Shown piece after piece: positions 16,521-42,409 of a DNA stretch of 64,000 bases. Under the pieces are notes generated by a model. The model searched no databases. It worked only from the letters and a program-made list of their open reading frames with translations, and was not told where the DNA came from. A program made the position numbers and the translations under genes. Position 1 is the first letter of the stretch. Each line of letters begins with the position of its first letter. The stretch lies in the IMG/VR virus record IMGVR_UViG_3300005965_000002, positions 186,001-250,000 of that record. One strand, given 5' to 3'.

Positions 16521-17270
16521 ATGTCACAAGATTTTAAAATACAGAATAGATGCGATCATAAGATAAATTGGGAGGAAGGAACTCTTTCTTCTGATAGAAA
16601 ACGCATAGATGTCACTTATCGAATAGCTTCTAAATCATCTGTTTCGTTACGAATAAATAATGTAGCTATTCCAACCTCGAATTATAAAATAGTAAAAGAC
16701 GTAACGGTAGTCGATACTGAAAAGCCTTTTTATATACTAATGAACAATAAAATAAGGCATAATAACCCTCTGGTCGAGGTAAAGTACGTAACTTTTTTAA
16801 ATAGATGCCCAAAATGCCAGGGTACTAAATTTTTGGATGATATTGCTTATAGTTCATCTGGGGATATTACACAAGTAAAAGATGAATTTTTATTGTTACA
16901 AACAGTAGAGAAGTACATAGTTACAAATATAAGAAGTAACAAATTTCATTCTTGGATGGGAACTAACCTCCATGAATTAGTAGGTACAAAGATACTGGAC
17001 ATGGAATTACTACGGAATAAAGTTGTAGATGAAGTAAACTCGGCTATAGAAAAGCTAAAGGATATTCAGAGGCAGTTAGTCTCTACCGGAAGGCCGGTAA
17101 GTGCGGGTGAGCTTTTTGGTGAATTGATATCAGTAGACCTCACCCAGGATTTCGAAGATTTAAGCATAATATCAGTAACCGTAAGATTTACAGCTCAAAG
17201 CGGAAAAAGGCTAAACTATACGCAATTACTGGAGCTGGCAGATCTAAGGCAAAGGATTAACTTCTCATGA
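16521..17270 (+). CDS. gp25/GPW-like baseplate wedge protein with N-terminal extension
   Basis: LLQTVEKYIVTNIRSNKFHSWMGTNLHELVG matches the gp25-family core. It lies directly before baseplate J. The N-terminal part carries C-D-H and C-P-K-C. Confidence 0.7.
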   Translation: MSQDFKIQNRCDHKINWEEGTLSSDRKRIDVTYRIASKSSVSLRINNVAIPTSNYKIVKDVTVVDTEKPFYILMNNKIRHNNPLVEVKYVTFLNRCPKCQGTKFLDDIAYSSSGDITQVKDEFLLLQTVEKYIVTNIRSNKFHSWMGTNLHELVGTKILDMELLRNKVVDEVNSAIEKLKDIQRQLVSTGRPVSAGELFGELISVDLTQDFEDLSIISVTVRFTAQSGKRLNYTQLLELADLRQRINFS

Positions 17271-20200
17271 CTATAGCTGCTCCTATTATTGAGTACCCTA
17301 TGACCGATTGGACTGGCAGCGGTACTGATAAATATTACACATCTGAATTGATACAGATAATATCGGGCACTGTTCCTGTGACTACTGCTGACGTTCAGGA
17401 ACTAGGCTCTATAATTACTGTAGAGTTTAGGTACAGAATTACCTCAGGCGGCACTACTTCGCCTTATTCTAACTTTAGCAATGCTGGAATCACAGTAGGT
17501 AGCACTCTTAGCACGGCTACTGAAATTCCCTGGTCGCTAAACACAGAAGGTATAGTTAGCTTCGATGTTGATGATACTATAGAGTTTGAATTAAAAACAG
17601 TAAAAAGAATTTCAAACAATCAGGGTGCTGGTTATGTATCCGAAGAGAGCTCCCTATCAAAGGTAACAGTAGGGATTATTGCAGAAGATAAAATCACGGC
17701 TTCTGTCATAGAACCTACTGGAACCAGATTAGAGCGTGCTAGGGATTACATAAAGGTATTTGTCCCGGTTAATTCTTTAAAGACAAACAGAGACAATGAT
17801 CTTGTAGGCGTAAACTTTTACATTTCATTAGATGCCGGTGGTGGAGTAAACGGTTACCAAAAGATAAATCAATCCTATATTGTTGAAGCAGATGTGTCGG
17901 AAACAGAATCGGAAGTATTACAGGTTTCATCAACGGAAGATACTACTAATAACCTGACGGTTACAACTACAAAAACCCGTCAGGTGCAAAGAGAGTACGT
18001 AACTTACACTATCAATTCAACAGTATTGAATAGACTTGTATCCGAGAATAAAATTAGGAATGTATTTTTGGATAACGATGCTACTTTAAACCCGGACATA
18101 GTTTATTATTTTGTAACCACTGCTCTTTCCTTTGATAAGTCATTAAAGCAGGTCGTCGAGAGTAATTACTCGGTTGAACTTGAGGGTGAATTCCTGGAAT
18201 ATGCTACAGATTTTCAAAGCATACCGGGTAGAAATAATTCGGATATAATTTTTTCTGTAACAAAAACTCTTACTACTGATAATAATACTGTTAATGTAAT
18301 AGGCGGTTCTGTTGTAAGAGACATATTAGATCCCGTAGCATTAGAATTTTCTAAGTATTACATAATTCAGGATTTTATATTCAAGACGCTATCAGTGGAT
18401 ACGCTTATAGATTTTGACGACGCCGATGGAGATGGTGTCAGTGATCCCATCGAAACTAATATAGATAAGCGAAACTTAGCCGACGCTCTCGGGATTAGGG
18501 ATGGGGCAAATTTACAGTTAATTATAAATGAACAGTTCGATAAAAGAGCTGCAAACTGCAATATCACACGACGAGATCCGATACAGGCTACAGGTAAAGT
18601 AACTTTTTTTGTATCGAATGCCCCGACAAATGATATAATCATTCCAGCAGGTACTCAGGTAAGCACAGCGGCTGACCCGACTACGGGCTCAACATCCGTG
18701 GCTTTTACTGTAGTAGGGACAAAATTAATTGATTCTTCAAATCCTGACTTTTACTATAATCCTACTTTAAGAAGATACGAAATTGAGGCTGACGTAAGGG
18801 CTGTGCTCGGCGGGTCTCAAGGTAATGTACCAGCTGGGTCTATAGAAAGAGCTACTGGATTACCTAGTAATATCCAGGTAACTAATACTAATCCCACTAA
18901 CTACGGCGCTAATAGAGAAACTAATAGAGAGTTGTCCGAAAGAATAAAGCTAGCTATAGCTGGTGTGGATTCAGGTACAGAGGGTGGCTACAAGAAAACG
19001 AGCGAAAGCGTTCCCGGGGTACAGCAGGCCCGAGTAGAAAAAGCTGGTGATGAATTAATGGTTAGAGATTTGGATATCTCCAGCAGAAGACATTTGGGCG
19101 GTAAAGTAGACATATACATTAAAGGCGAGAGAAGACGCCAATACATTGATCAGGTAGCCTTTAAATTTGAGTACCCCACCGACACATTCGGTAAGCTCAG
19201 CGGGGAGAGATTTTACGTAATTAATGCTAATGAATTTAGAATCCAAACCCGGAATACAAAAGTTACGGCCACTAATCCTATTATTTCGGTTTCTAATGTT
19301 AGAAATGTAACTAGAGGATCAGATTATGATATAAGCGGGTACCGTATTATAGGGGATGGGGATACCGTAATTTTAGAAAATAATCAGACCAATAATAGAA
19401 TAGGTATGGCTACATTAGATGTGATAGAGGTAAACTACAGCTATCGAAGCTCTAATGTAATTACTCTGGAACATCAACCCGTAAATACTATTATTTCTGT
19501 AACTGATTCAGATGGTAATCTGGTAGATGAAGCAGAATATAGGTTAGTGAGACTGGAAGATCCGCTGCTAACGGGGGAGTCCTCTATTTCTAAATATGGT
19601 ATAGAATTCTTATTCGACTCTCAAAATGACGTAAATGAATTTAGACAGATAGATGATGAGCAACATGACATGTTTCTCGATATACCGATATCTTTGTCTT
19701 TAAAGGGTGTAGATATTGATTCCATTACGGTTTTGAACGCGGATGACGAATCCATAGTCTATAAAAAAGATATAGACTATGAGGTTACCGGAGGGACGCA
19801 GGTCATACCAACACAATTATCCCTGCTGCCTAATAGTGCGATTAGGCAAGGACAAAGAATCTCTGTATCTTATAGAGCAAATGAAAATTTTGAGGTCACA
19901 TACCAAGCCAACTCATTGGTTGAGCAAGCTCAAGAAGAAGTAGAAAAGTTAAAGCACGCAGATGCCGATGTTGTTGTTAAACAAGGGATAGGAAATAGAG
20001 TCGATATCAGCGCCCGTGTTATAAAAGATGGAAGGTTAGATAGTAGGTATTTAGAATCTGATCGAACTGTTTTAAAATCTAGAATACAAACAGCCGTAGC
20101 TAACTATGTACAAAAGCTCAGGATGGGGGAAACCTTTACTCAGGCCTCACTGGTAAATGTTATCCGTAGCGTACCTGGGGTAAAAGATATAAAATTGCCC

Positions 20201-20665
20201 TTAATACGAATGATGAAACGTAACGGGTCTTTTATTCCTCTCGATGATTTAGGGAATCTTTCATTTGAAGTTTTCCAGAAAACTAGCAGCAGTGGGGTGC
20301 CCTCGTATAGGACACTTGATAGTGTTCTTACTTACCGGACTTCAGAAAACGGCGGGCCTGATCACCTTTTCCGTACCGTTTACGAGGATAATATCAGCTT
20401 AATGCTTGTAGATGACCCGACTGAGGTATCGCATGGTCCTGGTAGAGCTTATATACAGTCTGATGGTAGGATCATAGTCAGTACAAAAGACGGGGCCCCT
20501 CCACAAAGTAAATACTATAAAGCTGCCTATTACGTTTTATACCCAAATGATGTTAATGTAGCTGAGGATATAGAAACCACGGAAATTGAATACCTAGTGG
20601 TGGACTCAGCTAGTTTAAAAGATTTAGAAATTATAACTGAGCAAGTTACCAGAAGAGGATTATAA
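17267..20665 (+). CDS. Baseplate J-like (gp6/gpJ) wedge protein, 1132 aa
   Basis: ATGKVTFF...IPAGTQVST, VLGGSQGNVPAGSI...VTNTNPTNYGANRETNRELSERIKLAIAGVDSGTEGGY...VPGV...GGKVDIYI are characteristic Baseplate_J motifs. Extra N-terminal and internal beta-sandwich domains are present. Confidence 0.9.
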   Translation: MTIAAPIIEYPMTDWTGSGTDKYYTSELIQIISGTVPVTTADVQELGSIITVEFRYRITSGGTTSPYSNFSNAGITVGSTLSTATEIPWSLNTEGIVSFDVDDTIEFELKTVKRISNNQGAGYVSEESSLSKVTVGIIAEDKITASVIEPTGTRLERARDYIKVFVPVNSLKTNRDNDLVGVNFYISLDAGGGVNGYQKINQSYIVEADVSETESEVLQVSSTEDTTNNLTVTTTKTRQVQREYVTYTINSTVLNRLVSENKIRNVFLDNDATLNPDIVYYFVTTALSFDKSLKQVVESNYSVELEGEFLEYATDFQSIPGRNNSDIIFSVTKTLTTDNNTVNVIGGSVVRDILDPVALEFSKYYIIQDFIFKTLSVDTLIDFDDADGDGVSDPIETNIDKRNLADALGIRDGANLQLIINEQFDKRAANCNITRRDPIQATGKVTFFVSNAPTNDIIIPAGTQVSTAADPTTGSTSVAFTVVGTKLIDSSNPDFYYNPTLRRYEIEADVRAVLGGSQGNVPAGSIERATGLPSNIQVTNTNPTNYGANRETNRELSERIKLAIAGVDSGTEGGYKKTSESVPGVQQARVEKAGDELMVRDLDISSRRHLGGKVDIYIKGERRRQYIDQVAFKFEYPTDTFGKLSGERFYVINANEFRIQTRNTKVTATNPIISVSNVRNVTRGSDYDISGYRIIGDGDTVILENNQTNNRIGMATLDVIEVNYSYRSSNVITLEHQPVNTIISVTDSDGNLVDEAEYRLVRLEDPLLTGESSISKYGIEFLFDSQNDVNEFRQIDDEQHDMFLDIPISLSLKGVDIDSITVLNADDESIVYKKDIDYEVTGGTQVIPTQLSLLPNSAIRQGQRISVSYRANENFEVTYQANSLVEQAQEEVEKLKHADADVVVKQGIGNRVDISARVIKDGRLDSRYLESDRTVLKSRIQTAVANYVQKLRMGETFTQASLVNVIRSVPGVKDIKLPLIRMMKRNGSFIPLDDLGNLSFEVFQKTSSSGVPSYRTLDSVLTYRTSENGGPDHLFRTVYEDNISLMLVDDPTEVSHGPGRAYIQSDGRIIVSTKDGAPPQSKYYKAAYYVLYPNDVNVAEDIETTEIEYLVVDSASLKDLEIITEQVTRRGL

Positions 20666-20667
20666 AG

Positions 20668-23600
20668 ATGGCCACAAACCTCGGTGATGATGTTTTTAGC
20701 GTATATGACGGACTTTCTTATGCCTATGATAAGGTATTCTTCCAACCCGGAAAGCCTCCTCTTGCTGCAGAGCTTAATGATGCCCAGCAGTTTGTTGAAC
20801 TACTTTCACAAAAGAGCACGGGGCACTTACCCTCTGGGTGGTTAACCAGTAGGTCTCACTATACTTCTTCTGAATTAGTGAATAAGTTTTACACTCAGAA
20901 CCCAAAAGGAGCCAAACCAGAGGTAGCTTTGGTAAACGGTTGGCCAATCTATGTAACCAACACGGATACTGAACTAAAGCACGTAAACTCTATAGATTTT
21001 AATGATTTTGAGTTACGCTCAGGTACGCGAGTAGACGGAGTTTTCCTTGAAGTATGGAGAAAGAAAATAGCTCCTAATAGAGATGATATGGATGCTTCGT
21101 CAGCTAAGCCTCAGCCCATACGTATCACCAACGATATTAATAGTGTTGATATGCTTGATAACAATATTGGATGGGCTGTCGGGGATAATGGAGTCATTTT
21201 AAAGACTACAGATGGCGGTAACAATTGGGTTTCTAAAGAGGCTCCTGTTTCTGTAAGTTGGAAGGCTGTCAAATTTCTAAACAGCTCTATTGGGTTTGCC
21301 GTGGGTTCTGGCGGATACATCATTAAGAGCTTAAACGGCGGACAAACCTGGTTTACGGTAGATACCGACATAAACGATACGTTGAACGATATAGTGATTT
21401 TAGATTCTAAAAATGTGGTGGCAGTTGGTAATAACGGCACGGTTCTATTAGCATCCGATGGTTTAACTTTTAATGTGATTACTCAGACTTCAGGGGTCAC
21501 GGAAGATTTTAACGGTGTATTTTTCTTTGATACATCTGTGGGGTGGGTCGTAGGAAATAATGGCACACTTCTTATTTCTTTAGATGGCGGTAGATCCTGG
21601 ACTAAACAAACCATTACTGATTCAGATACAAATGCTAAGATTGAGAAAAATCTAAATTCTGTTGGTTTTTATAATTTAAATGATGGGATTATAGTAGGTG
21701 ATGATGGCCTAATCCTAAAGAGCACAGATGGTGGGTATAACTGGGCTAACGTGAGCGGCAGAATATGGACAGGATCCGAATATAAGTCCCTAGTTCAGAT
21801 AGACCCACGAAAAGAGAACCATCTAAATAAAGTGTTTATTAGCAGAAACTTTCCGTTAAATTTTACCATTTCAGTTTATTCTTCATCTAAGAATTTTTTC
21901 ACTGGTGCCACATATAAGATATCTCCTGCAAGTAGTCCGAATTCGTTAGTGCTTGAGTGGAGAGGTGTGCAGGACGGAAAGTCTTACTCAAAGGTATTAG
22001 ACCTTGAGGTATACGCATCATCAGAAGAACTGAGAGATGCTATCAATAATATAACAAGTCCTTATTTAGCATCAGATGTGGGTTTACCCTATGACGATAG
22101 AAGAAAAACAAGAGTTTTCGAGTCTATCGTAAACTTCGCCCCCATTGCTTCTCCGTCAAATATTAACCCTATATCTGGAACGATACCTTCCAGGACAACT
22201 ACTAATATCAACTTTTCTATTGAGGATAGAGCATGGATAGCCGGTAATGACGGCACCGTACTGACCACGGTTAATAGCGGTTCTAGGTGGCAAATATCAG
22301 ATACCGGTAAGGGTATAGACTTTTATGGTATAGAATTCATAGACGAGAATTTAGGTTGGGTGGTAGGTGCCGAGGGTTTTATCCTAAAGTATGACCCGGA
22401 AAACCAGACTAACAATTATGAAGAGCAGACTACGGATTTAAGTGTGGAGACTACAGAGAGAATATATCCGGAGGGAAATATCTTATCAGACGCCGAAGAT
22501 TTCCTTGAGGATTTAATGGTCGATCCTAATGTGGGTGTTGAAACCTCCAGGAGAGTCCAAATTCAGTACCGTATTCGGATAGTGGATGGAGTGGATCCTT
22601 TTAATTATCCTGAGGCAGGGTTAGGTGCTCAGTACGTATACAGCCAAGGGCCTAACAATAATGCATCGGATGCGGGTAGCTACACGTTTAAGAATATGGG
22701 CAGTGAGAATGGAGACTACGGGCTTTGGAGAGCTCGGTGCAGGAACACCTTTGATGGGTTTACTTGGGCTGTCCCAATGTTTTTTGTGTCAAGAAGGAAT
22801 TCGTCCCCTTTTAATATAGAGTCTAATATTAATGGTTCTACCTATTTTGAATTAGGAGCTGTCCGCCCGGATGGTCTAACATATGAAGAGATTGTAGATA
22901 CTGATATTGTAGATCTTAGAAGAAAGTTAAATATCAATTCCTATAGTCATTTGCTTGAGCAAAATTTGGACTCTCTGCTAAGCAATAATCTTAGGACAAA
23001 GCTCGATAATAGAGATAACCGTGGTACTCAATTTAGCACAAGTATAATGGGGGTTGACTCTTATGAGGGAATTTCTTCCATTGGAAATTTAGCTACAGGA
23101 GGAGTTTCTTCAACAGCGGTTGTTCGAGAAGATGTTAAGCAATTGAATCCTACAATAGCATTGACCGAAACAGAGCTCACTTTTGGACCCCGCGAAAAGG
23201 CTCTGTATCATAACGACTTGGCTTTTTATAGCGCTGTCGTCGTACGTGATGGTGAAGTTACTACTGAGCCTGTGGAAGGTACCTGGGAGGGTTTGGGTAC
23301 AAATACGGTAACTTTTGTTTTGAGTGATGCTAATGTTGCAGAAAACAACATCGAATATAGATTTACAGCCAGCTACATAGACTACTCAGGTACAGGTTTA
23401 TCCAAGGTCCCCCACAAGCCTTTAGGTATTCTCTACGTACCGGATGCCACGGGCAACTCCAGATTTTATCGAGGTATAAATACTCGTGACGTGTCCCAGA
23501 CCATTGAGACTTTAGCGGAAAGAGTAACCGGGTATCCTGATTATACCGTGGCCTATTCCGGTAGGACCATTTTGGATAATAAAGAATCCAGAGATCTGTA

Positions 23601-25143
23601 TAAGTTAGCCGTAACCTCGGATGAGGGTAGTACTTCTTATAACAGATCAGTACGTACCTTTAAAGGACAACAATTTAGAGGGTCATTGGTAGAATACCAT
23701 TATTTCTATCGGACAAGTGCTCCCACCAGAACTTTGGAAATACCGAAAAACGTAAACAATTATAGTGTGTTTTCTGTTCGTCAGGTAAAAGGAGTAAATG
23801 GATCCCTTTATAAGATTTCTAATAGTTATGCTAAGGGGGAAACACTTAGAGACTGGAAAATTAATGATCTGAATCAGTCGGTGAATAGCAATATTATTAT
23901 TTATCTTGATGAGTCATTCACTATACCTGCTGATACTGTGGTAGAAGTGATAATGGAAGTTAATACGGCACCATCCTCTTTATACTCTGATTTAGGTATC
24001 ACAGTTACCAATGAGGGTGATAATCAGGGAAGTTTACGTGCTCCGTATATCGCAAACTATAATGTAGGATCAAAAGGCATAGGCGGACTATACAGCTCCA
24101 TCCTATTTCCAGTTTTTATCAATGATCAGCAGAATTATATAGAGGTCGATTTAAATAATCAAAAAAAAATAAATCAAGATGAGCCCTATACGGGGTTTCC
24201 GGCTTTTTCTGGTATGGGAGAATTAGAAGATGGGTCAATTCTTGGTGTAAGCACAATTCAAACCGATGACAGCAACCATCAGCTCTATGTTTGGTACCAG
24301 GAGAATACCGGAAAAAAACAATTTTCTGCTTTACCCATTTCAAGCATTACAGGTACAACGGACGACCCGGATAATACCGGACTAGGAACATCAATAATCA
24401 GGCTGAATATAGACCCTAGAGTTACCCTCAGCCAGAAGCTGGTGTACGTGCCTATGCTCGTTAAGCAGACTACTCTACCTAATTTAGGAGATACTAGCGT
24501 AGCATACGCTACATATTATTACAGGCCCTATCAAACATTGAATACATTACCGGAGTCACTATCTGTAGAAATAATGAAGTCTTTTGAGAATGTTTACGTA
24601 TCTAACCTCGGAACTGGCGGTACTCCAATAATTAGAGGGGAGCCGTACCAGAACCCTATTGAGCATATTCCTGTGAATGACCCTGGATTTCTGAATGAGA
24701 ACATATTTTCAAATGTTGATGATTTAGATTTTATTAATTATAGTATTGATTCAGGGTTTGTTAAACTGCCCGCTATAATCTCCAGGACATTGGGAAAAAC
24801 AATTACTCTATCAAATCCTAATAATGTGGGGGATAGCCTGGGTAGGGCTTTCTACTCAGAGTGCTCCGAAAATTTCAGGGTACAGGCTGAGGATTTAACT
24901 ATTGCTACTCCAAGAAAAGTTTTTATACCAATGATCGCCAGAATAAGGTCAGCCGTAACAGAGCCTTTTGTTAGGGGAGAGCTGGTGCTGTTGGTAGTCT
25001 CAAAGGTGTATAAAGCTAGAATCGAAAACTCTACTGGTTTTTATGAGGACGAGAATGAGGAATACCAGCCCGGTTACATAGAGGAAGCTGATACTGCAGT
25101 AGGTGTATACCGCCTGGCAAATAAACCCATTGTTCGGATGTAA
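20668..25143 (+). CDS. Baseplate/fibre protein (DUF4815-like N-terminus) with an inserted 7-bladed YCF48/BNR-type beta-propeller
   Basis: N-terminal VFFQPGKPPLAAELNDAQ. Seven W/F-x-VG-x-x-G-x-I-x-x-[TS]-x-[DN]GG-x-x-W-type blades at ~21133-22400. Paralogous to 50642..54211. Confidence 0.75.
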   Translation: MATNLGDDVFSVYDGLSYAYDKVFFQPGKPPLAAELNDAQQFVELLSQKSTGHLPSGWLTSRSHYTSSELVNKFYTQNPKGAKPEVALVNGWPIYVTNTDTELKHVNSIDFNDFELRSGTRVDGVFLEVWRKKIAPNRDDMDASSAKPQPIRITNDINSVDMLDNNIGWAVGDNGVILKTTDGGNNWVSKEAPVSVSWKAVKFLNSSIGFAVGSGGYIIKSLNGGQTWFTVDTDINDTLNDIVILDSKNVVAVGNNGTVLLASDGLTFNVITQTSGVTEDFNGVFFFDTSVGWVVGNNGTLLISLDGGRSWTKQTITDSDTNAKIEKNLNSVGFYNLNDGIIVGDDGLILKSTDGGYNWANVSGRIWTGSEYKSLVQIDPRKENHLNKVFISRNFPLNFTISVYSSSKNFFTGATYKISPASSPNSLVLEWRGVQDGKSYSKVLDLEVYASSEELRDAINNITSPYLASDVGLPYDDRRKTRVFESIVNFAPIASPSNINPISGTIPSRTTTNINFSIEDRAWIAGNDGTVLTTVNSGSRWQISDTGKGIDFYGIEFIDENLGWVVGAEGFILKYDPENQTNNYEEQTTDLSVETTERIYPEGNILSDAEDFLEDLMVDPNVGVETSRRVQIQYRIRIVDGVDPFNYPEAGLGAQYVYSQGPNNNASDAGSYTFKNMGSENGDYGLWRARCRNTFDGFTWAVPMFFVSRRNSSPFNIESNINGSTYFELGAVRPDGLTYEEIVDTDIVDLRRKLNINSYSHLLEQNLDSLLSNNLRTKLDNRDNRGTQFSTSIMGVDSYEGISSIGNLATGGVSSTAVVREDVKQLNPTIALTETELTFGPREKALYHNDLAFYSAVVVRDGEVTTEPVEGTWEGLGTNTVTFVLSDANVAENNIEYRFTASYIDYSGTGLSKVPHKPLGILYVPDATGNSRFYRGINTRDVSQTIETLAERVTGYPDYTVAYSGRTILDNKESRDLYKLAVTSDEGSTSYNRSVRTFKGQQFRGSLVEYHYFYRTSAPTRTLEIPKNVNNYSVFSVRQVKGVNGSLYKISNSYAKGETLRDWKINDLNQSVNSNIIIYLDESFTIPADTVVEVIMEVNTAPSSLYSDLGITVTNEGDNQGSLRAPYIANYNVGSKGIGGLYSSILFPVFINDQQNYIEVDLNNQKKINQDEPYTGFPAFSGMGELEDGSILGVSTIQTDDSNHQLYVWYQENTGKKQFSALPISSITGTTDDPDNTGLGTSIIRLNIDPRVTLSQKLVYVPMLVKQTTLPNLGDTSVAYATYYYRPYQTLNTLPESLSVEIMKSFENVYVSNLGTGGTPIIRGEPYQNPIEHIPVNDPGFLNENIFSNVDDLDFINYSIDSGFVKLPAIISRTLGKTITLSNPNNVGDSLGRAFYSECSENFRVQAEDLTIATPRKVFIPMIARIRSAVTEPFVRGELVLLVVSKVYKARIENSTGFYEDENEEYQPGYIEEADTAVGVYRLANKPIVRM

Positions 25144-25146
25144 TAC

Positions 25147-26223
25147 ATGGAAATTCGTTTAGGAAAAAACAATGTCATTAGAAGAGTTAAGGATGGACAA
25201 GGCAATACTAAGTACATCGTTAACTTAGGTACTATCATATATAACAATGTATTTAAGACATTAGATAACCTTGAAATTCCTATTTTTAATGAATCCATAT
25301 TTAGATTGCCTGATGATGCCAATAAGTACGCTGCTGTAAACGCTTACTATAATGTAGAGCAAGGCAGGTTCATATTTAAGACAGTCAAGAAGTCTATCTC
25401 AAATATCGGCTCTGTTAAGTCTGATGTAGTATATAATTCACTTCCTATCTGCCAGTTCATTTTAAGGCAAGTAGACCCTACTTTTGAAGTTATTCAAGTC
25501 TATGAGTATTCACAAGCTGCTACTTTTAGTATCTCAGATTCTCTAGAAAAAGGAGAAAAGGGGCTGCAGGGTCCTTTAGGGCAGACAGGAGCTCAAGGAG
25601 AAACAGGAGCTTTAGGCATAACAGGAGCTTTAGGAGAAATAGGATATACGGGTATACAAGGACCTACAGGCGTAGGTGAGACAGGGTATCACGGCCCGCA
25701 AGGAGAAACAGGGTGGTATCCCGATCTTGATTTAACTTTTCACTTAAAATTTAAGAGTGCAGATACGGTGCAGGTCGATTACTCCGTTTATGAAAAAGAT
25801 TTTCAATGGATTTCTAGTGGTGCCTCCTATTTTTCTACAGAGACAGGAATAATTGATAATGCCCATTTTGCTCAGTACGTCGGTGGGACTTCTAGATATT
25901 TAAGAAATGAATACATTGGTATCGGTAAGTCAGGTATAGGTTCAACCGGTTCTTTTTCTATGTGGTTCCGTCTTGACGTTCCGCCAATTCCTTCTTTTAC
26001 GTATAGCATAGATTCACAAGTATCTACGAAGGTACGGTTTCAGGATACTTCTGAGAATTATCCGTCGAACTGGTTCTGGGAATTTGGTGGAATAAATAAG
26101 ACCAGCACCGGTACAGATATCCCTGTCATTGATTTTGAATCCTCAGGATCATATGAGGTTTCATTGACGGCTACTAACAATTATGGATCTAATAAAGTTA
26201 CTCAAATTGTAGTGGTTCCATAA
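25147..26223 (+). CDS. Collagen-like protein 1: shared N-terminal domain + Gly-X-Y repeat + N-terminal half of a LamG-like domain + PKD domain
   Basis: GEKGLQGPLGQTGAQGETGALGITGALGEIGYTGIQGPTG..., then DLTFHLKF...DYS...GSFSMWFRLD, then PSFTYS...FQDTS...WFWEFG...GSYEVSLTATN. Confidence 0.75.
   Translation: MEIRLGKNNVIRRVKDGQGNTKYIVNLGTIIYNNVFKTLDNLEIPIFNESIFRLPDDANKYAAVNAYYNVEQGRFIFKTVKKSISNIGSVKSDVVYNSLPICQFILRQVDPTFEVIQVYEYSQAATFSISDSLEKGEKGLQGPLGQTGAQGETGALGITGALGEIGYTGIQGPTGVGETGYHGPQGETGWYPDLDLTFHLKFKSADTVQVDYSVYEKDFQWISSGASYFSTETGIIDNAHFAQYVGGTSRYLRNEYIGIGKSGIGSTGSFSMWFRLDVPPIPSFTYSIDSQVSTKVRFQDTSENYPSNWFWEFGGINKTSTGTDIPVIDFESSGSYEVSLTATNNYGSNKVTQIVVVP
25552..25719 (+). repeat. Collagen-like Gly-X-Y repeat (13 triplets, a GV interruption, then 5 more)
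   Basis: Read directly from the translation. Thr occupies the Y position in 7 triplets. Confidence 0.9.
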
Positions 26224-26744
26224 TGGATAGAATATTAGCAATGATTCCGTTAAAAGATGGGCACGCCTTTAAGTCTGAGGTTTTAAGGGGCTTGTGCAAG
26301 CAAACAGTGCCTGTTGATATAATGGCTGTTTCTAGACCTAAAAGCGAAAGGCATCGTAATATTCCTGCGGGATATATATCGATGTCAGAATGTAGAAATA
26401 TAGCAAAAGAAGAGGGTTTGGAGCAATACAATTCTGAATATTTTCTTTTGCTCAATAGAGACGTGGTATTAAAAAGAGACACAGATATTGAGGATATGAT
26501 AAATTTTCTTCAGTTTAATAGAGATTTTGGAGCTGTAGCTATAAATACTAGAAAAAAAGAAATCCGATTATTGGTTGATAATACTCATACAGATATAGCA
26601 TGCATGGTAATAAGAAGAAGTATATTGGAGAAGATTACTTTTCATAATGAAAAACATTGTAATTGCAGATGCGTGTGTGGCTATATAAGATCTAACGGTT
26701 TGAGTGTGGGCTACATAGACCATAGAAAATGTCCGGAGATTTAA
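26223..26744 (+). CDS. Minimal GT-A fold (GT2-like) glycosyltransferase
   Basis: Ordered GT2 landmarks: ILAMIP, LRGLCKQT, SECRNIA, EYFLLLNRDVVL (DxD position reads N-R-D), FGAVA, DIACMVIRRSILEKITF. Coupled to both neighbours (TAATG and TAA-ATG). Confidence 0.65.
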   Translation: MDRILAMIPLKDGHAFKSEVLRGLCKQTVPVDIMAVSRPKSERHRNIPAGYISMSECRNIAKEEGLEQYNSEYFLLLNRDVVLKRDTDIEDMINFLQFNRDFGAVAINTRKKEIRLLVDNTHTDIACMVIRRSILEKITFHNEKHCNCRCVCGYIRSNGLSVGYIDHRKCPEI

Positions 26745-29700
26745 ATGCTAGATTCTGTTTATTTTGTAGACCTATCAGCTACGGGTACTAGCCACGCAGG
26801 TACACCAAAAGATCCTTTTTCTTATGAGGATTTTTCTAATATTGTTGGGCCTTCAACTGATGATGAGCTTTTCTATTTTAAGGGCCAATATACTATTACA
26901 TCTGCATCACCAGCATTTAATACGGGTGGCGGTAATAAAAGAATAATAGCATGGGACTTAGAAGAGTTTGGTCCTTGGAGATTAAAGGTAGAAGACTTTT
27001 CTAAATTTTCATTAGGATCTACTTTTATCATAGAAGATGGTATCCTTTTAATAGATGACACAGGGGATATATCTTTTGACTTATTTCAACTAGAAAACGT
27101 CTATTTATATAGAAAAACATCTACAATTACAGACAAATTTATATTGGGAGGCTCGGCTGCTTCTAATATCTATATGTCCACAGTACAGATAGATGGAATT
27201 TTAGAGTACGACACCGGATCCATAACTACTAGTTGTCTTAAGGTAGAGAACGGTATATCAATTCCTTCTACAGCATCCACCGCAGCACTAACCTATTCTA
27301 CTTACAACGGAGATTCTACTGCAGTTACTCCTGATCCTGGATTCTCAGGGTATTTTAACTTTGCGAACAACCAGGATTTATTTGATTTTACGGGAATTAC
27401 GGACATAAATGATGACCCGCAGTTCCCTTCCGGGATTACTGTATCCGACCCTTTTAATGACCCCATTACCTTCTTTTTTGACGGTAATCCCAAAGTTAGA
27501 TCCCAGGGTGCCTTTTATAGCAATGGGGCTAATCCAATAGTTTATGTAGATTTGAATAGTGGTGTCCCCGCTGGTAGTGGGACTTCCGGATCCCCCTATA
27601 ATTTTACTCAATTTTATTCTGACCTGGATACCCGGTCATATGACACGGGTACGATTATTAAGCTTAAAGGGATGGCACAAACTACTAATTATATTTCTAT
27701 AGGCCAAAGATCGTTTGAGGGACATCTACTATTAGAAAGGTGGGAGAGTAGTATCCCCTGGGGAATTCATACTACGGATGGTATATCAAATAGAGGTATA
27801 TCAAGAGGCGGAATATTTAAAACTGATGCCGATTTTATTAATACATTGGATTTGTCGAATACCTACTTAGAGGCAAATAGAGTAATACTGTATTCTACTG
27901 ATAGAGGTGCTAAGATTAAAGGATCTACAGTGATAAGTTCTGGCACCCCAACAAGGATAGGTGACTGCTACACTCCCGAGATATACCTATTTGTCGATTC
28001 TAATTACATAGATTCCGGGGTAGCGGATGTCGGGTCAGATGTTTTTGTGTGGTATTTTGGGTTGTCCACAGCGTTTAGCCAAGCCTCTAATTCCGAATCT
28101 GACTTTTTTGATCCTTCTGAGGGTATTATTAAGACCTTTCAATTAGATGATTGCGTTTTTGGTGTCACTCCCTCAGTGGTTTCTTTTTCTACTACTTTCG
28201 ATGAAAATAATTACTTATACCCTTCCGATATATATAATAGCATCACTACTACCTCTTCAGATTATAGCACGAAATCAGGTTACTCTACTGGTATCTCAGG
28301 CAATCCCAGATACGGGGTGGGTGCCTACTATTTTCCGGAGGTGGTAGCTTCCTTTACAGCGTCCCCTACTTCAGGCGGTATACCGTTAGAAGTGAATTTT
28401 AATAATGACTCTACAGGTATTATAACTGAATACTCATGGGATTTTGGAGATGGTACTACTTCTACAGAAGAAAACCCTGTAAAGACTTATACCAGTGCGG
28501 GTACTTATACGGTTACGTTGACAGTTACTGGGTTAGAAGGGATTACTGATACTTTTACTAGAACTGATTATATTATAGCAGTTGATTCACTCACAGCTGG
28601 GTTTTCAGGATCACCTTTATCTGGATCAGAGCCCCTCACTGTTAATTTTACGGATAGCTCAATCGGTGACATAAGTTATCGTATATGGAATTTTGGTGAT
28701 GGTACGGCTTTAGAAGATGTAACCGATCCATCTCATACTTATAGTAATCCAGGAACATATACCGTCTCTCTTACAGTGCGTGATGCAGATTCTAATGAAG
28801 ATACAGAAACTAAAACAGATTATGTAGAAGTATCCTCTGGACCTTTAACTGCTAATTTCACGGGTACCCCACAATCTGGAGAAAAACCACTTACTGTTAA
28901 TTTTACAGATAATTCTGCGGGCAGTATTACATACAGATTGTGGGATTTTGGAGATGGGAATACGCAAGAAAACGTTACTGACCCATCTCATACTTATAGC
29001 GACTCCGGCGTTTACACAGTTTCTTTAACTATTAGAGATGCATCTCTCAATCAAGATATAAAAACAAGAACCGAGTATATAACAGTTACAGAGCCGCCTC
29101 TAAATGCTGATTTTTCTGCTAGTCCTGTTTTTGGCACTGAGCCTTTATCAGTATCTTTTACAGATAGCTCTACAGGGGATATATCTTATAGGCTATGGAC
29201 CTTTGGTGACGGGACTTCTGAAGAAGATACCGTAAACCCCTCCCATACATATACCAGCCCTGGTTTATACACAGTCAGCCTGTTGGTGAGGGATCCTTCA
29301 TTAGAAGAAGATTTAGAGACAAAGGTTAACTACGTAACTGTAGGTGAAGATTTTATAGTAGCCGACAAGGTTTTGATGGAATCCAGTAATGCTTCTACAG
29401 GGGATTATTGGAAGATATACATAGATGACCAGAAAAGATTTGTTTTTGAGACCAATGTATATATATGGAGAACTGTAGATCCTCAAGCTGAGATTAAAAA
29501 ATGGACGTTTATCCAATTTTTACCGCATAAAGATACCATGTACGTTGGGAAATACAGCTCTGGTTGGAAAAAAGTAGATCTTGTTAAATTCATTAACGGG
29601 TCTCCGGATACTCCAACCAGCACCAGAACGTATGTCGTTCCGAATTCTACATTTAAGATAGACGACATTCAAATATGGGATAAAGAAGTAAACAAAAAAA

Positions 29701-29753
29701 CCCATTTTCAGCAAAATAGGGGTAAAGCGGGATTACTGGATAATCGATCCTAA
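26745..29753 (+). CDS. Adhesin-like protein: two beta-helix-like modules + 4 PKD domains + C-terminal half of a LamG-like domain
   Basis: WDLEEFGPWR module. Four F-x-G/A-x-P-x-x-G-x-x-PL-x-V-x-F-x-[ND]-x-S-x-G...WxFGDG...GxYTVxL repeats. Terminal WKIYID...KWTFI...YVG...KIDDIQIWDK. Confidence 0.75.
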   Translation: MLDSVYFVDLSATGTSHAGTPKDPFSYEDFSNIVGPSTDDELFYFKGQYTITSASPAFNTGGGNKRIIAWDLEEFGPWRLKVEDFSKFSLGSTFIIEDGILLIDDTGDISFDLFQLENVYLYRKTSTITDKFILGGSAASNIYMSTVQIDGILEYDTGSITTSCLKVENGISIPSTASTAALTYSTYNGDSTAVTPDPGFSGYFNFANNQDLFDFTGITDINDDPQFPSGITVSDPFNDPITFFFDGNPKVRSQGAFYSNGANPIVYVDLNSGVPAGSGTSGSPYNFTQFYSDLDTRSYDTGTIIKLKGMAQTTNYISIGQRSFEGHLLLERWESSIPWGIHTTDGISNRGISRGGIFKTDADFINTLDLSNTYLEANRVILYSTDRGAKIKGSTVISSGTPTRIGDCYTPEIYLFVDSNYIDSGVADVGSDVFVWYFGLSTAFSQASNSESDFFDPSEGIIKTFQLDDCVFGVTPSVVSFSTTFDENNYLYPSDIYNSITTTSSDYSTKSGYSTGISGNPRYGVGAYYFPEVVASFTASPTSGGIPLEVNFNNDSTGIITEYSWDFGDGTTSTEENPVKTYTSAGTYTVTLTVTGLEGITDTFTRTDYIIAVDSLTAGFSGSPLSGSEPLTVNFTDSSIGDISYRIWNFGDGTALEDVTDPSHTYSNPGTYTVSLTVRDADSNEDTETKTDYVEVSSGPLTANFTGTPQSGEKPLTVNFTDNSAGSITYRLWDFGDGNTQENVTDPSHTYSDSGVYTVSLTIRDASLNQDIKTRTEYITVTEPPLNADFSASPVFGTEPLSVSFTDSSTGDISYRLWTFGDGTSEEDTVNPSHTYTSPGLYTVSLLVRDPSLEEDLETKVNYVTVGEDFIVADKVLMESSNASTGDYWKIYIDDQKRFVFETNVYIWRTVDPQAEIKKWTFIQFLPHKDTMYVGKYSSGWKKVDLVKFINGSPDTPTSTRTYVVPNSTFKIDDIQIWDKEVNKKTHFQQNRGKAGLLDNRS
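28343..29342 (+). repeat. Four tandem PKD-domain repeats
   Basis: Four ~83-aa units with WDFGDG/WNFGDG/WTFGDG cores, similar at both protein and DNA level. Confidence 0.9.
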
Positions 29754-40503: not shown

Positions 40504-41151
40504 ATGTTAAAAAGTAAAAAGAACACGATAAATGCTTCTTTAAAACCAACTATATCTAAGGGGACTGTTAGAATAAATGCGGGTTCCTTTGTATTTGATA
40601 ATAATTGGATAAATTTTAGAGGCAAACTGTTTAAGCTAGATGACTATATAGGTAGGGTCTTAGCTCCGCCTAGGACAAGGTTTTTTAATGATCGAAATTA
40701 CGCTTTCTATTTAGTTATTGGATTAGATAAAAATGGGGAGCTGACTTATTTAGAGGGTAACCAGGTAAAGTTTTCTTCTATTAAGTCTGTACCAGTACCG
40801 TCTGTGATAGATATTATTCCTCTTGTGGGGCTTATTGTTATTCAGGATGGCTCTAGAGATCTAAACTTTGGCTACAAACCTTTGAATGATTCCAATGTCA
40901 TATTTTTTTCTGGTGCCGGTAATGTCCTCGATAAAGATAAAAAGGGAATTCAGGGAGAATCAAATAGATCATATGGGTATACAGGGCTGTTGGGGGAGAC
41001 AGGAATAGAGGGAGAGCGGGGCGCAAAAGGCTTGAGGGGTGAGACTGGAATAATTGGCCCTACTATTTATGGGGATCGGGGGGAAACCGGTACTAAAGGT
41101 ATGACAGGAATTAACTGGAATATACATATTCCCTTTGAATTCTTTCTCTAA
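40504..41151 (+). CDS. Collagen-like protein 2: shared N-terminal domain + Gly-X-Y repeat, no C-terminal domain
   Basis: GYTGLLGETGIEGERGAKGLRGETGIIGPT...GDRGETGTKGMTG. The N-terminal domain aligns by eye with 41180 and 25147. Confidence 0.78.
   Translation: MLKSKKNTINASLKPTISKGTVRINAGSFVFDNNWINFRGKLFKLDDYIGRVLAPPRTRFFNDRNYAFYLVIGLDKNGELTYLEGNQVKFSSIKSVPVPSVIDIIPLVGLIVIQDGSRDLNFGYKPLNDSNVIFFSGAGNVLDKDKKGIQGESNRSYGYTGLLGETGIEGERGAKGLRGETGIIGPTIYGDRGETGTKGMTGINWNIHIPFEFFL
40945..41115 (+). repeat. Collagen-like Gly-X-Y repeat (about 17 triplets, two interruptions)
   Basis: Read directly from the translation. Thr at the Y position in 6 triplets. Confidence 0.9.
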
Positions 41152-41179: not shown

Positions 41180-42409
41180 ATGGCATTTAGAACTAGAAAA
41201 GTAGCTGATTTCTCTACCCTTAATAAAGATGTTAATGTCCACGGCGAGAATGTCGTGTCCATTAAAGGGGGCTCTGTTGCTATCGGAGATACCTGGATAC
41301 AGTTTAAAGGTACTAAAATTGATCTCCAGGATTTTGTAGAAAAGTATATAACCAATTCAAGAAGGTTGTTTAATCAGCGATTTGGTGTGCTTTATGTATT
41401 GATAGCGATTAACGAGAAAGCACAGTTAGAAGTAATACCTAGTATATCGTATAACAAGACATCGACCGGTGATGTTAAAGTTTTTCCTAGTTTATCGAGT
41501 AAATTACCTATAATGGTAGTTAAGCTTACCCAAGATGGAAGCTACGGGTTAACCGGTATTAGTAGAATAACTGAAAGCGATGTAGAACAGTACTTAGGGT
41601 ATGGTAATTTTACTCTGAGGGGCCCTCAGGGAGAAACAGGGGGTCTTGGCAGTACCGGTTTTCAAGGACTTACCGGTTTTATCGGAGCTACTGGTTATTC
41701 TGGTCCTACAGGGCTACAAGGAGAGACCGGAATTAATAGTTTTTCTGTAAAAGGGTATCCTGGAGTTAGAGGAGAGCAGGGGGAGAGCCTTCCAGCTTTT
41801 GAACCGACCAGATATGCGATTCCAGTAGCAAATTTTGTAGGTGCCCCTTTAAGCGGAGAAGCAAGTCTTTCTGTATCCTTTACCGATTTATCAAACGGAA
41901 ATCCAACTTCCTGGCTATGGGATTTTGGGGATGGAAATACTTCTACTCAACAGAATCCGACTCATAGTTACGCTTCAGCTGGGACATATACTGTGTCTTT
42001 GGTAACTACGAGCCCAGCTGGTGAGGATCAAGAGATTAAATATGATTACATAACAGTTACCGAAGCATTAGCTGCTGATTTTGCGGTAACCCCCACAGAA
42101 GGTGACGAGAGAGTAACTACATTTAATTTTGATGGCAGTTTCTCAGCCGGAACGATAACTTCATATAGTTGGGATTTTGGAGATTCAATTTCTGCTACGG
42201 GAGAGACTGCGACCCATGTTTATAATGGGGTATCTGGTCAAATTACAGTATCCCTTACAGTAACGGGGCCTTCTGGCTCAGATACTGTATCAAAAACTAT
42301 TACTGTGGACGGGTACATAATACAGAGCACAACAGATGACGATGAAGATACCTGGCAGGATACAGCGGATAGTTCAGAGGATAATGTACAAAATTCATCG
42401 GAGGAATAA
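41180..42409 (+). CDS. Collagen-like protein 3: shared N-terminal domain + Gly-X-Y repeat + 2 PKD domains + acidic tail
   Basis: GPQGETGGLGSTGFQGLTGFIGATGYSGPTGLQGETGIN...GYPGVRGEQGES, two WxWDFGD PKD units, and a D/E-rich end. Confidence 0.8.
   Translation: MAFRTRKVADFSTLNKDVNVHGENVVSIKGGSVAIGDTWIQFKGTKIDLQDFVEKYITNSRRLFNQRFGVLYVLIAINEKAQLEVIPSISYNKTSTGDVKVFPSLSSKLPIMVVKLTQDGSYGLTGISRITESDVEQYLGYGNFTLRGPQGETGGLGSTGFQGLTGFIGATGYSGPTGLQGETGINSFSVKGYPGVRGEQGESLPAFEPTRYAIPVANFVGAPLSGEASLSVSFTDLSNGNPTSWLWDFGDGNTSTQQNPTHSYASAGTYTVSLVTTSPAGEDQEIKYDYITVTEALAADFAVTPTEGDERVTTFNFDGSFSAGTITSYSWDFGDSISATGETATHVYNGVSGQITVSLTVTGPSGSDTVSKTITVDGYIIQSTTDDDEDTWQDTADSSEDNVQNSSEE
41621..41788 (+). repeat. Collagen-like Gly-X-Y repeat (13 triplets, interruption, 4 more)
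   Basis: Read directly from the translation. Thr falls at Y in every second triplet of the first 12. Confidence 0.9.

What the first reader, a model, noticed from the sequence alone, without database searches (positions are those of the whole stretch)
25552..26744. Glycosyltransferase coupled to Gly-X-Thr collagen: phage-encoded fibre O-glycosylation?
Seen: a 173-aa GT2-like gene overlaps the stop of collagen gene 1. The three collagen tracts are Pro-poor with Thr at the Y position in 7, 6 and 6 triplets, strictly alternating in 41180 (GET, GST, GLT, GAT, GPT, GET). The DxD position reads N-R-D. Known: glycosylated Thr at Y stabilises Riftia cuticle collagen, and Bacillus anthracis BclA has O-glycosylated GXT collagen. 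Inference: the GT modifies these Thr residues (or the Ser/Thr-rich adhesins) to stabilise or camouflage fibres. The N-R-D variant could also mean altered or lost activity.
Basis: partly seen in the sequence, partly recalled or inferred. Interest (0 to 1): 0.75.

Follow-up and report, generated by a model that had tools for sequence, protein, structure and literature searches.

The report
Mini glycosyltransferase inside phage tail-fibre genes
A very small sugar-transferring enzyme of a previously undescribed family sits among the tail-fibre genes of a huge uncultured phage, and it probably adds sugars to the phage's own fibres, but nothing singles out the collagen threonines as its target.

Summary
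ORF 26223-26744 (173 aa) overlaps the stop of a collagen/PKD fibre gene by one base and abuts the next fibre gene. It folds with high confidence (pLDDT 97) as a minimal GT-A glycosyltransferase. Its DxD position reads N-R-D. The three collagen tracts carry Thr at Y in 7, 6 and 6 triplets.

It belongs to an unnamed family: about 176 clusters, no Pfam hit at threshold, no PHROG, and no homolog in 50,697 deposited phage genomes. The family consensus is D-S-D. N-R-D is a derived variant that is invariant among the closest relatives. The family hallmark is His122...Cys127...Cys146-x-Cys148.

In 19 independent contigs the gene lies inside tail, baseplate or fibre modules. In five of them it sits next to sugar-nucleotide enzymes or further glycosyltransferases: a UDP-xylose-synthase-like SDR three times, an RmlC-like trio once, and multi-GT genes. 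In other proteins the domain is fused to GT8, GT32 and GT2 domains. This supports a working transferase acting in fibre morphogenesis.

The collagen link is only partial. Collagen genes are nearby in 3 lineages, but the commonest neighbour is a beta-helix-like fibre domain. A Thr share of 35-40% at Y is the ordinary bacterial background. The acceptor is unresolved. I rate it a new variant of a known kind.

The parts
26223..26744 (+). 173-aa minimal GT-A glycosyltransferase-like protein, member of an unnamed phage family with an H...C...CxC signature
   Evidence: ORF. Homologs. AF2 pLDDT 97.1. GT-A fold hits. Family profile against GT2 structure sequences.
26454..26462 (+). N78-R79-D80 at the DxD position, at the end of the third strand
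   Evidence: Translation. Family columns: position 78 is D in 80 and N in 22 of 109; position 80 is D in 95 of 109. N-R-D is invariant in the closest homologs. It marks a derived clade of 19 sequences, support 0.82.
26586..26666 (+). His122, Cys127 and Cys146-x-Cys148, the family hallmark. I infer a metal (Zn) site lying where GT2 enzymes and STIV A197 carry their catalytic-base helix.
   Evidence: Translation. H122 is present in 107, C146 in 106, C148 in 109 and C127 in 83 of 109 sequences. The helix 147-157 starts here. The A197 base Asp151 lies in a helix (PMC4187194), and the model-to-A197 alignment is nearly colinear. The geometry itself was not checked.
25147..26223 (+). 358-aa fibre protein: N-terminal domain, collagen-like tract (aa 136-191, nt 25552-25719) and a C-terminal PKD domain. 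Its stop overlaps the GT-like start.
   Evidence: Pfam Collagen E 2.8e-7 and PKD_4 E 3.4e-7. PHROG tail-fibre families. Triplet parse.
26745..29753 (+). 1002-aa fibre protein: two tandem 'GPW' beta-helix-like domains followed by four PKD domains. This domain type is the most conserved neighbour of the GT-like gene.
   Evidence: Pfam PKD x4. Domain alignment A4. AF2 pLDDT of about 88 over residues 1-170 with only weak beta-helix matches, E >= 0.05. The same domain lies next to the GT-like gene in L002, L005, L009, L011, L018, L024, L025, L033 and L034.
40504..41151 (+). 215-aa collagen-like fibre protein (collagen gene 2)
   Evidence: Triplet parse: 6 of 15 triplets with Thr at Y. Its homolog lies 3 genes upstream of the GT-like gene in L023.
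41180..42409 (+). 409-aa collagen-like fibre protein (collagen gene 3) with alternating GXT
   Evidence: Triplet parse: 6 of 17 triplets. Its homolog lies 2 genes upstream of the GT-like gene in L023.
17267..25143 (+). Baseplate wedge (gp6/J-like, 1132 aa) and a 1491-aa BNR/Ycf48-like propeller protein. They anchor the module as tail baseplate and fibres.
   Evidence: PHROG 6 baseplate wedge E 9e-22. PF14870 E 4e-31. The same gene order occurs in L002 and L034.

Best explanation
The 173-aa protein is a cytoplasmic, minimal GT-A glycosyltransferase of a phage-specific, so far unnamed family. It is translated together with the tail-fibre proteins.

Shown:
- The GT-A fold.
- Homology to GT2 enzymes through the nucleotide-binding half.
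- A maintained N-R-D in place of the family's D-S-D.
- A constant position inside tail, baseplate or fibre operons.
- Repeated pairing with nucleotide-sugar enzymes and other glycosyltransferases in relatives.

Inferred:
- It binds a nucleotide sugar. In several relatives this is probably a UDP-pentose made by the adjacent UDP-glucuronate-decarboxylase-type enzyme. In this phage the sugar would be host-supplied.
- Asp80 holds the diphosphate, with or without a metal, possibly helped by Arg79 and His122.
- It transfers the sugar to one or more fibre-module proteins before or during assembly, so the virion carries glycosylated fibres.

The acceptor is not identified. Candidates are the beta-helix/PKD fibre encoded just downstream and the collagen-like fibres.
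For: Fold:
- pLDDT 97.1, pTM 0.92.

Sequence:
- The family profile hits GT2 structure sequences at E 2e-7, with D-S-D aligned on D-S-D.
- 25 of 109 members hit PF00535.
- Conserved residues are polar ones on the loops at the strand ends, as in an enzyme: P9, D12, G13, Q27, R38-P39, R58-N59, the 78-80 motif, H122 and the CxC.

Fusions:
- The domain is joined to GT8, GT32, canonical GT2, TOD1-like GT and FkbM methyltransferase domains in other proteins.

Neighbourhood:
- L023: a UDP-4-keto-pentose/UDP-xylose synthase-type SDR overlaps its stop (NF008872, 310.5 bits, above the 294 cut-off).
- L035: the same enzyme type, overlapping. L033: the same type one gene away, plus GT8/GT9 and GT2 genes.
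- L034, a close relative of this phage: an SDR, an RmlC-like epimerase and an oxidoreductase lie directly upstream.
- L016: two multi-GT genes lie directly upstream.
- In all 19 contexts the gene is on the same strand as structural genes and tightly packed with them.

Own genome:
- It also encodes a 1384-aa protein with TPR repeats and four GT domains, and another GT2. The phage therefore invests in glycosylation.
Against: - No activity, donor or acceptor has been measured.
- The first Asp of DxD is replaced. Within the same clade some members have no acidic residue at the motif at all (NRR, NQN, NVN, NNN, NRT). One of these (NRT, L033) still sits with sugar enzymes.
- The usual catalytic-base position seems to be occupied by the invariant Cys-x-Cys, so the chemistry is not that of a textbook GT2.
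- No sugar-nucleotide enzyme was found in the 258 kb held for this phage, which is only 55% complete.
- The protein is short for a GT-A and lacks an obvious acceptor-binding subdomain.
- The complex prediction with the downstream domain gave no answer.
Confidence: 0.55

Rival explanations
1. One reading: the enzyme O-glycosylates the Thr residues at the Y position of the Gly-X-Thr collagen-like tracts, as in Bacillus BclA, to stabilise or mask the fibres.
For: - The gene overlaps the stop of a collagen/PKD gene in the window.
- In an unrelated 80-kb phage contig (L009) it overlaps the stop of a 796-aa (GQT)n collagen fibre.
- In L023 the gene has moved to another slot, which again lies just after two collagen genes.
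- L016 has GXT tracts 8 kb away.
- L034 pairs it with RmlC-like deoxy-sugar genes. From my own knowledge, the rml operon likewise lies next to bclA.
Against: - Collagen tracts are present in only 6 of 19 contexts (6 of the 11 loci of 7.6 kb or more). They are absent from L017, L018, L030, L033 and L035 as far as those were read.
- Four of the six belong to one phage lineage.
- In L002 another gene lies between the collagen gene and this one.
- Thr at Y (35-40%) equals the bacterial background, and most bacterial collagens are reported as unglycosylated.
- The tracts are short, at 15-19 triplets.
Confidence: 0.2
2. It is a non-catalytic GT-A-fold protein: an assembly factor or minor structural component of the neighbouring beta-helix fibre. 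It keeps the fold and a metal site but no longer transfers sugar.
For: - The gene is small and sits immediately after a fibre gene, as tail-fibre chaperone genes do.
- The DxD motif is degenerate in its clade, with five members lacking any acidic residue.
- The catalytic-base position appears to be replaced by Cys-x-Cys.
- It is constantly paired with the 'GPW' domain, including a cassette-like insertion between Mu gp47 and gp48 homologs in L018.
- A viral precedent exists for a GT-A fold used as a structural protein: vaccinia H3 is among the fold hits.
Against: - The conserved residues are the polar active-site-face residues, not a surface patch.
- N-R-D is invariant among relatives of 45-62% identity.
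- Adjacent nucleotide-sugar enzymes in four contigs would have no purpose next to a pseudo-enzyme.
- The complex prediction gave no support, although it counts as no evidence either way.
- There is no PHROG or chaperone-family match.
Confidence: 0.15
3. It is an active transferase whose acceptor is not a virion protein. It would act on a host envelope glycan or lipid-linked intermediate, for example receptor masking against superinfection as with the prophage enzyme TarP, or on phage DNA.
For: - Structural similarity to TarP, TarS, RmlT and polysaccharide synthases equals that to protein glycosyltransferases.
- Phage glycosyltransferases are best known for DNA and serotype modification (PMC12619734).
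Against: - There is no membrane segment or polymer-binding domain in 173 aa.
- The gene is always embedded in, and translationally coupled with, late structural genes. It is never found with DNA-metabolism or lysogeny genes.
- Its position relative to fibre genes is conserved across unrelated phage types (myovirus-like, Mu-like and P22-portal-like), which is unlike an accessory gene of varying location.
Confidence: 0.1

Closest known systems
STIV A197 (PDB 2C0N), a putative glycosyltransferase of an archaeal virus
   Same: - A minimal stand-alone viral GT-A protein of under 200 aa.
- It is likewise proposed, without an assay, to glycosylate a virion protein made in the cytosol (PMC4187194).
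   Different: - A197 has a canonical DxD and an Asp151 base in the helix. Here the motif is N-R-D and the helix starts with Cys-x-Cys.
- There is no detectable sequence relationship by HMMER.
- The virus type and gene context differ.
GT2-type GT-A enzymes (PcManGT 6YV7, SpsA, heparosan synthase B, hyaluronan and cellulose synthase cores)
   Same: - The family profile aligns over the nucleotide-binding half, including the DxD strand.
   Different: - The protein scores below the Pfam GT2 threshold.
- S-R-P replaces the usual acidic residues after strand 2.
- There is no 'ED'/Asp base motif and no C-terminal acceptor subdomain.
- His and three Cys are invariant instead.
Mycobacteriophage virion glycosylation (Freeman et al. 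2023, as cited in PMC12619734)
   Same: Phage-encoded glycosyltransferases whose products decorate virion proteins. This is the known kind of system that the present case most resembles in logic.
   Different: - There the acceptors are the C-termini of capsid and tail-tube subunits.
- No homolog of the present protein exists in 50,697 deposited phage genomes.
- Here the gene lies in the fibre/baseplate module and no glycan has been observed.
BclA exosporium collagen of Bacillus (O-glycosylated GXT repeats)
   Same: - Thr-rich, hydroxyproline-free collagen-like tracts.
- BclA is glycosylated.
- A relative of this phage (L034) carries RmlC-like deoxy-sugar genes beside the gene.
   Different: - The BclA repeats are long and mostly GPT, whereas here there are 15-19 mixed triplets.
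- No rml genes occur in this window.
- No evidence of glycans.
Collagen glycosyltransferases (GLT25D1/ColGalT1, LH3, Mimivirus R699)
   Same: GT-A fold. R699 is the top Foldseek PDB hit (E 5.6e-7), and ColGalT1 appears in both the sequence-profile and the fold lists.
   Different: - Those enzymes act on hydroxylysine or galactosyl-hydroxylysine. Here Lys at Y occurs in only 1, 2 and 0 triplets, and no 2OG oxygenase was found.

Membership tests
GT-A fold nucleotide-sugar glycosyltransferases (GT2-like) | Single-domain alpha/beta/alpha Rossmann-like GT-A fold | tested here: met
   [not shown]
GT-A fold nucleotide-sugar glycosyltransferases (GT2-like) | Sequence membership in Pfam PF00535 at the gathering score | tested here: not met
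   17.5 bits against a cut-off of 23.3. Only 25 of 109 family members reach E <= 0.01. A family profile does reach GT2 structure sequences at E 2e-7.
GT-A fold nucleotide-sugar glycosyltransferases (GT2-like) | DxD motif after the central strand | tested here: inconclusive
   It reads N-R-D, with the last Asp kept. The family consensus is D-S-D: 75 of 109 members are D-x-D. Several characterised GT-A enzymes use only the last Asp (my own knowledge of SpsA, GnT-I and beta4GalT1).
GT-A fold nucleotide-sugar glycosyltransferases (GT2-like) | Acidic catalytic base on the helix after the fifth strand (A197 Asp151; GT2 'ED') | tested here: inconclusive
   The helix 147-157 begins with the invariant C146-N-C148.
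GT-A fold nucleotide-sugar glycosyltransferases (GT2-like) | Transfer of a sugar from a nucleotide donor | not testable with these tools
   Only indirect evidence: adjacent UDP-xylose-synthase-like, RmlC-like and GT genes in relatives.
Collagen hydroxylysine glycosyltransferases (ColGalT1, LH3, R699) | Hydroxylysine acceptor and an accompanying lysyl hydroxylase | tested here: not met
   No PF13640 match in the 258-kb record. Lys at Y occurs in 1, 2 and 0 triplets.
Collagen hydroxylysine glycosyltransferases (ColGalT1, LH3, R699) | Closer to these than to other GT-A families | tested here: not met
   [not shown]
BclA-type O-glycosylated GXT collagen system | Thr-rich GXT tracts beyond the background level | tested here: not met
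   35-40% Thr at Y, against 31.6% for all bacteria and 48.3% for Gram-positives.
BclA-type O-glycosylated GXT collagen system | Glycan attached to the collagen Thr | not testable with these tools
   Needs mass spectrometry of expressed or virion protein.
Phage virion-protein glycosylation systems (mycobacteriophage type) | Phage glycosyltransferase gene inside the structural operon | tested here: met
   Window, plus 18 further contexts.
Phage virion-protein glycosylation systems (mycobacteriophage type) | Homology to the known phage enzymes | tested here: not met
   tblastn against 50,697 phage records found no match at E <= 1e-3. No PHROG match.
Tail-fibre assembly chaperones | Homology to known chaperone families (Tfa, gp38, gp57 types) | tested here: not met
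   No PHROG or Pfam chaperone match. The fold is GT-A.

The most novel reading that the evidence does not exclude
The family is a dedicated fibre glycosyltransferase with a new active-site design. A His/Cys3 metal site replaces the usual acidic base, and Asn-Arg-Asp replaces DxD. In this lineage it would put a pentose or deoxy-hexose on the Thr of Gly-X-Thr collagen-like fibres. That would make it the first enzyme identified for Thr O-glycosylation of a prokaryotic-type collagen, and would show that phage receptor-binding fibres are routinely glycosylated.
Probability: 0.15. Interest if true: 0.8.

Novelty: new variant of a known kind. Interest (0 to 1): 0.55.

Why it matters
Glycosylated phage virions have so far been shown for only a few mycobacteriophages, on capsid and tail-tube proteins. 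A compact enzyme family that travels with tail fibres would mean that sugar coats on receptor-binding fibres are widespread in environmental phages. The family occurs across myovirus-like, Mu-like and podovirus-like phages, and it often brings its own UDP-pentose or deoxy-sugar supply.

Such coats bear on host range, fibre stability and escape from recognition. At 173 aa the enzyme would also be one of the smallest glycosyltransferases, with an unusual Cys-rich site, and it can be tested by simple co-expression with its neighbours.

Tried and rejected
- Sequence searches against deposited phages found nothing: blastn and tblastn against 50,697 phage genomes, and PHROGs.
- A single-sequence search of PDB gave only chance hits to designed TIM barrels.
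Scans of IMG/VR with A1 and A5 returned only the phage itself and L002.
- The complex prediction (GT-like protein, Zn and the downstream domain) returned 'no answer', with a median score of 0.00. It is not used as evidence.
- I rejected hydroxylysine-type collagen glycosylation: no 2OG oxygenase was found and there are almost no Lys at Y.
- I looked in this phage's own 258 kb for NTP-transferase, epimerase and UDP-xylose-synthase genes and found none. The record is only 55% complete, so this is weak evidence.
- The geometry of the His/Cys cluster could not be examined, because model coordinates are not exposed to the tools.
Full report
**Setting.** The window is bases 186001-250000 of a 258,580-base IMG/VR virus record that CheckV rates 55% complete, so it comes from a very large phage. 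From about 0.9 kb to 55 kb the + strand carries an uninterrupted run of large structural genes:
- a baseplate hub/lysozyme-like protein;
- a gp6/J-like baseplate wedge protein (PHROG 6, E 9e-22);
- a 1491-aa BNR/Ycf48-like propeller protein;
- a series of fibre proteins with PKD domains, collagen-like tracts and beta-helix caps.

**The observation.**
- ORF 26223-26744 encodes 173 aa. Its ATG shares one base with the TAA of the 358-aa collagen/PKD gene (TAATG). Its own stop is followed at once by the ATG of the 1002-aa gene at 26745.
- The three collagen tracts contain Thr at Y in 7 of 19, 6 of 15 and 6 of 17 triplets, strictly alternating in the third gene, with few prolines.
- The DxD position reads N78-R79-D80.
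- The Thr share of 35-40% is not unusual. A review gives 31.6% Thr at Y for bacterial collagen-like proteins overall and 48.3% for Gram-positive ones. It also notes that most are not glycosylated (PMC8968730).

**What the protein is.**
- Alone it gives only a sub-threshold Pfam GT2 match (17.5 bits against 23.3), no PHROG and no tblastn match in 50,697 deposited phage genomes.
- An exhaustive HMMER search found 176 cluster representatives at E <= 1e-3, nearly all 150-190 aa stand-alone proteins.
- A profile of 109 of them (A2) matches GT2 structure sequences. Heparosan synthase B scores E 2e-7, with the family's D-S-D on the enzyme's D-S-D. PcManGT, TarS, TarP and SpsA match more weakly.
- AlphaFold2 with this alignment gives pLDDT 97.1 and pTM 0.92.
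- Every structural neighbour in PDB, AFDB, BFVD and the ESM Atlas is a GT-A glycosyltransferase.
- The mimiviral collagen glucosyltransferase R699 topped the Foldseek list but is only rank 50 here. Its appearance therefore says nothing specific about collagen.

**Active-site reading.**
- Over the family, position 78 is Asp in 80 and Asn in 22 of 109 sequences. Position 80 is Asp in 95 of 109. D-x-D is present in 75 of 109.
- A maximum-likelihood tree places the window's protein in a clade of 19 (support 0.82). In 18 of them the first Asp has become Asn or His. The sister sequences are D-S-D.
- Among the closest relatives (45-62% identity) N-R-D is invariant. It is therefore a maintained variant and not a decayed site.
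- Five members of the same clade have no acidic residue there at all (NRR, NRT, NQN, NVN, NNN). The canonical metal-binding role of the motif is thus not indispensable in this clade.
- The near-universal residues are Gln27, Arg58, His122, Cys146 and Cys148, with Cys127 in 83 of 109.
- The Cys-x-Cys opens the helix 147-157. In A197 the catalytic base Asp151 lies in a helix (PMC4187194), and GT2 enzymes carry their 'ED' base at the corresponding place (my own knowledge). I infer, without coordinates, a His/Cys3 metal site in that region. Chemistry that departs from a textbook GT2 is therefore possible.

**Evidence that the family really works with sugars.**
- Fusions. In longer proteins the domain is joined to GT8, GT32, canonical GT2, TOD1-like GT and FkbM methyltransferase domains.
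- Neighbourhoods. I read 19 independent contigs that carry a family member. In all of them the gene lies on the same strand as structural genes and tightly against them.
- L023 (49% identical, N-R-D): its stop is overlapped by a 343-aa SDR that scores above the NCBIfam cut-off for the bifunctional UDP-4-keto-pentose/UDP-xylose synthase (310.5 against 294 bits).
- L035 (P22-type portal nearby): the same enzyme type overlaps the stop.
- L033: the same enzyme type lies one gene away, together with GT8/GT9 and GT2 genes and a second mini-GT paralog.
- L034, a close relative of this phage with the same BNR, collagen/PKD and fibre order: an SDR epimerase/dehydratase, an RmlC-like epimerase (143.8 bits, cut-off 155.75) and a DRL-type oxidoreductase lie directly before the gene.
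- L016: two multi-GT genes precede it.
- Nucleotide-sugar enzymes beside the gene in four contigs of different phage types would make little sense next to a pseudo-enzyme.
- This phage itself shows no such enzyme in the 258 kb held. It does encode a 1384-aa protein with TPR repeats and four GT domains, and a further GT2.

**Which protein is modified?** The evidence gives out here.
- Collagen-like GXT tracts lie in the same locus in 6 of 19 contexts: the window, L002, L034, L023, L009 and L016. They represent three independent lineages.
- Two cases are striking. In L009 the gene overlaps the stop of a 796-aa (GQT)n fibre. In L023 it has moved to another slot that again follows two collagen genes, homologs of the window's genes at 40504 and 41180.
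- Against this, in L002 a 514-aa gene separates collagen and GT-like genes. L017, L018, L030, L033 and L035 show no collagen in the DNA read.
- The commonest neighbour (10 of 19, in both the N-x-D and D-S-D clades) is a fibre protein that starts with a conserved domain of about 260 aa. The domain is marked by G-x-G-T-x3-P near the start and W-x5-G-P-W at about residue 75 (alignment A4).
- The window's 1002-aa protein has two such domains before its four PKD domains.
- In L018 the gene and this domain appear together as an insertion between Mu gp47 and gp48 homologs.
- The domain models as a stack of short strands. pLDDT is about 88 over residues 1-170, and there are only weak matches (E >= 0.05) to pectate and rhamnogalacturonan lyases and tailspikes. 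A beta-helix is probable but not proven.
- A complex prediction of the enzyme with this domain gave no answer.

**Conclusion.**
- The best-supported reading is a working, minimal glycosyltransferase that modifies tail-fibre-module proteins during morphogenesis (confidence 0.55). The donor is a nucleotide sugar; in several relatives it is probably a UDP-pentose.
- A non-catalytic assembly or structural role (0.15) and a non-virion acceptor (0.1) are the remaining rivals.
- Phage-encoded virion glycosylation is a known kind of system, described for mycobacteriophage capsid and tail-tube proteins (Freeman 2023, cited in PMC12619734). New here are the enzyme family, its place in fibre modules, its partner genes and its unusual conserved residues. 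I found no paper that links a phage tail glycosyltransferase with a UDP-xylose synthase.

Noticed in passing
G000:C1:137633-141787 (outside the window; L031:7633-11787): A 1384-aa protein combining TPR repeats with four glycosyltransferase domains (GT2, GT1-type, GT2, GT4-type). A TPR-plus-GT architecture recalls protein-targeting glycosyltransferases, so it could be part of the same virion glycosylation pathway.
   Followed up: partly
G000:C1:132434-133669 (L031:2434-3669): A 411-aa protein with a nucleoside 2-deoxyribosyltransferase-like N-terminal part and a 2'-5' RNA ligase/Acb1-like C-terminal part (PF13563 E 5e-11, PF23474 Acb1 E 1.7e-6). It is a possible anti-CBASS nucleotide-degrading protein.
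   Followed up: no
window 26745-29753, 30290-34297, 34307-40495: The conserved 'GPW' beta-helix-like domain occurs twice in tandem in the 1002-aa protein. G-P-W motifs also recur inside the 1335-aa and 2062-aa fibre proteins, whose N-termini look like beta-helix caps. This suggests a modular, duplicated fibre-domain family.
   Followed up: partly
window 26658-26678: In this protein and its 62% relative the invariant Cys-x-Cys is extended to Cys-x-Cys-x-Cys-x-Cys (C146, C148, C150, C152). The two extra cysteines are not conserved in the wider family.
   Followed up: no
L033:7935-8486: A second, diverged mini GT-A paralog (183 aa, D-R-D motif) lies four genes upstream of the family member in the same contig. 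Some phages therefore carry two of these enzymes.
   Followed up: no
L012:513-1223 and L012:1220-1822: In one short contig the family member overlaps the stop of a 236-aa radical SAM protein and is followed by a BNR-like protein. The meaning of this pairing is unexplained.
   Followed up: no
window 3571-13236: A single 3221-aa ORF lies between the baseplate-hub-like gene and the wedge genes. It was not analysed and could be a giant tape-measure or baseplate protein.
   Followed up: no
L034:10835-12007: Between the GT-like gene and the next fibre gene, the close relative L034 carries a 390-aa gene whose precomputed annotation is PF27229 (SSO2105_N). My own Pfam scan found no match for it. It may be a mobile-element insertion within the fibre module.
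   Followed up: no
G000:C1:4855-5799 (-) and 9011-11026 (-) (L032): The phage encodes its own sigma-70 family factor (regions 2, 3 and 4) and a type IA DNA topoisomerase with zinc ribbons.
   Followed up: no
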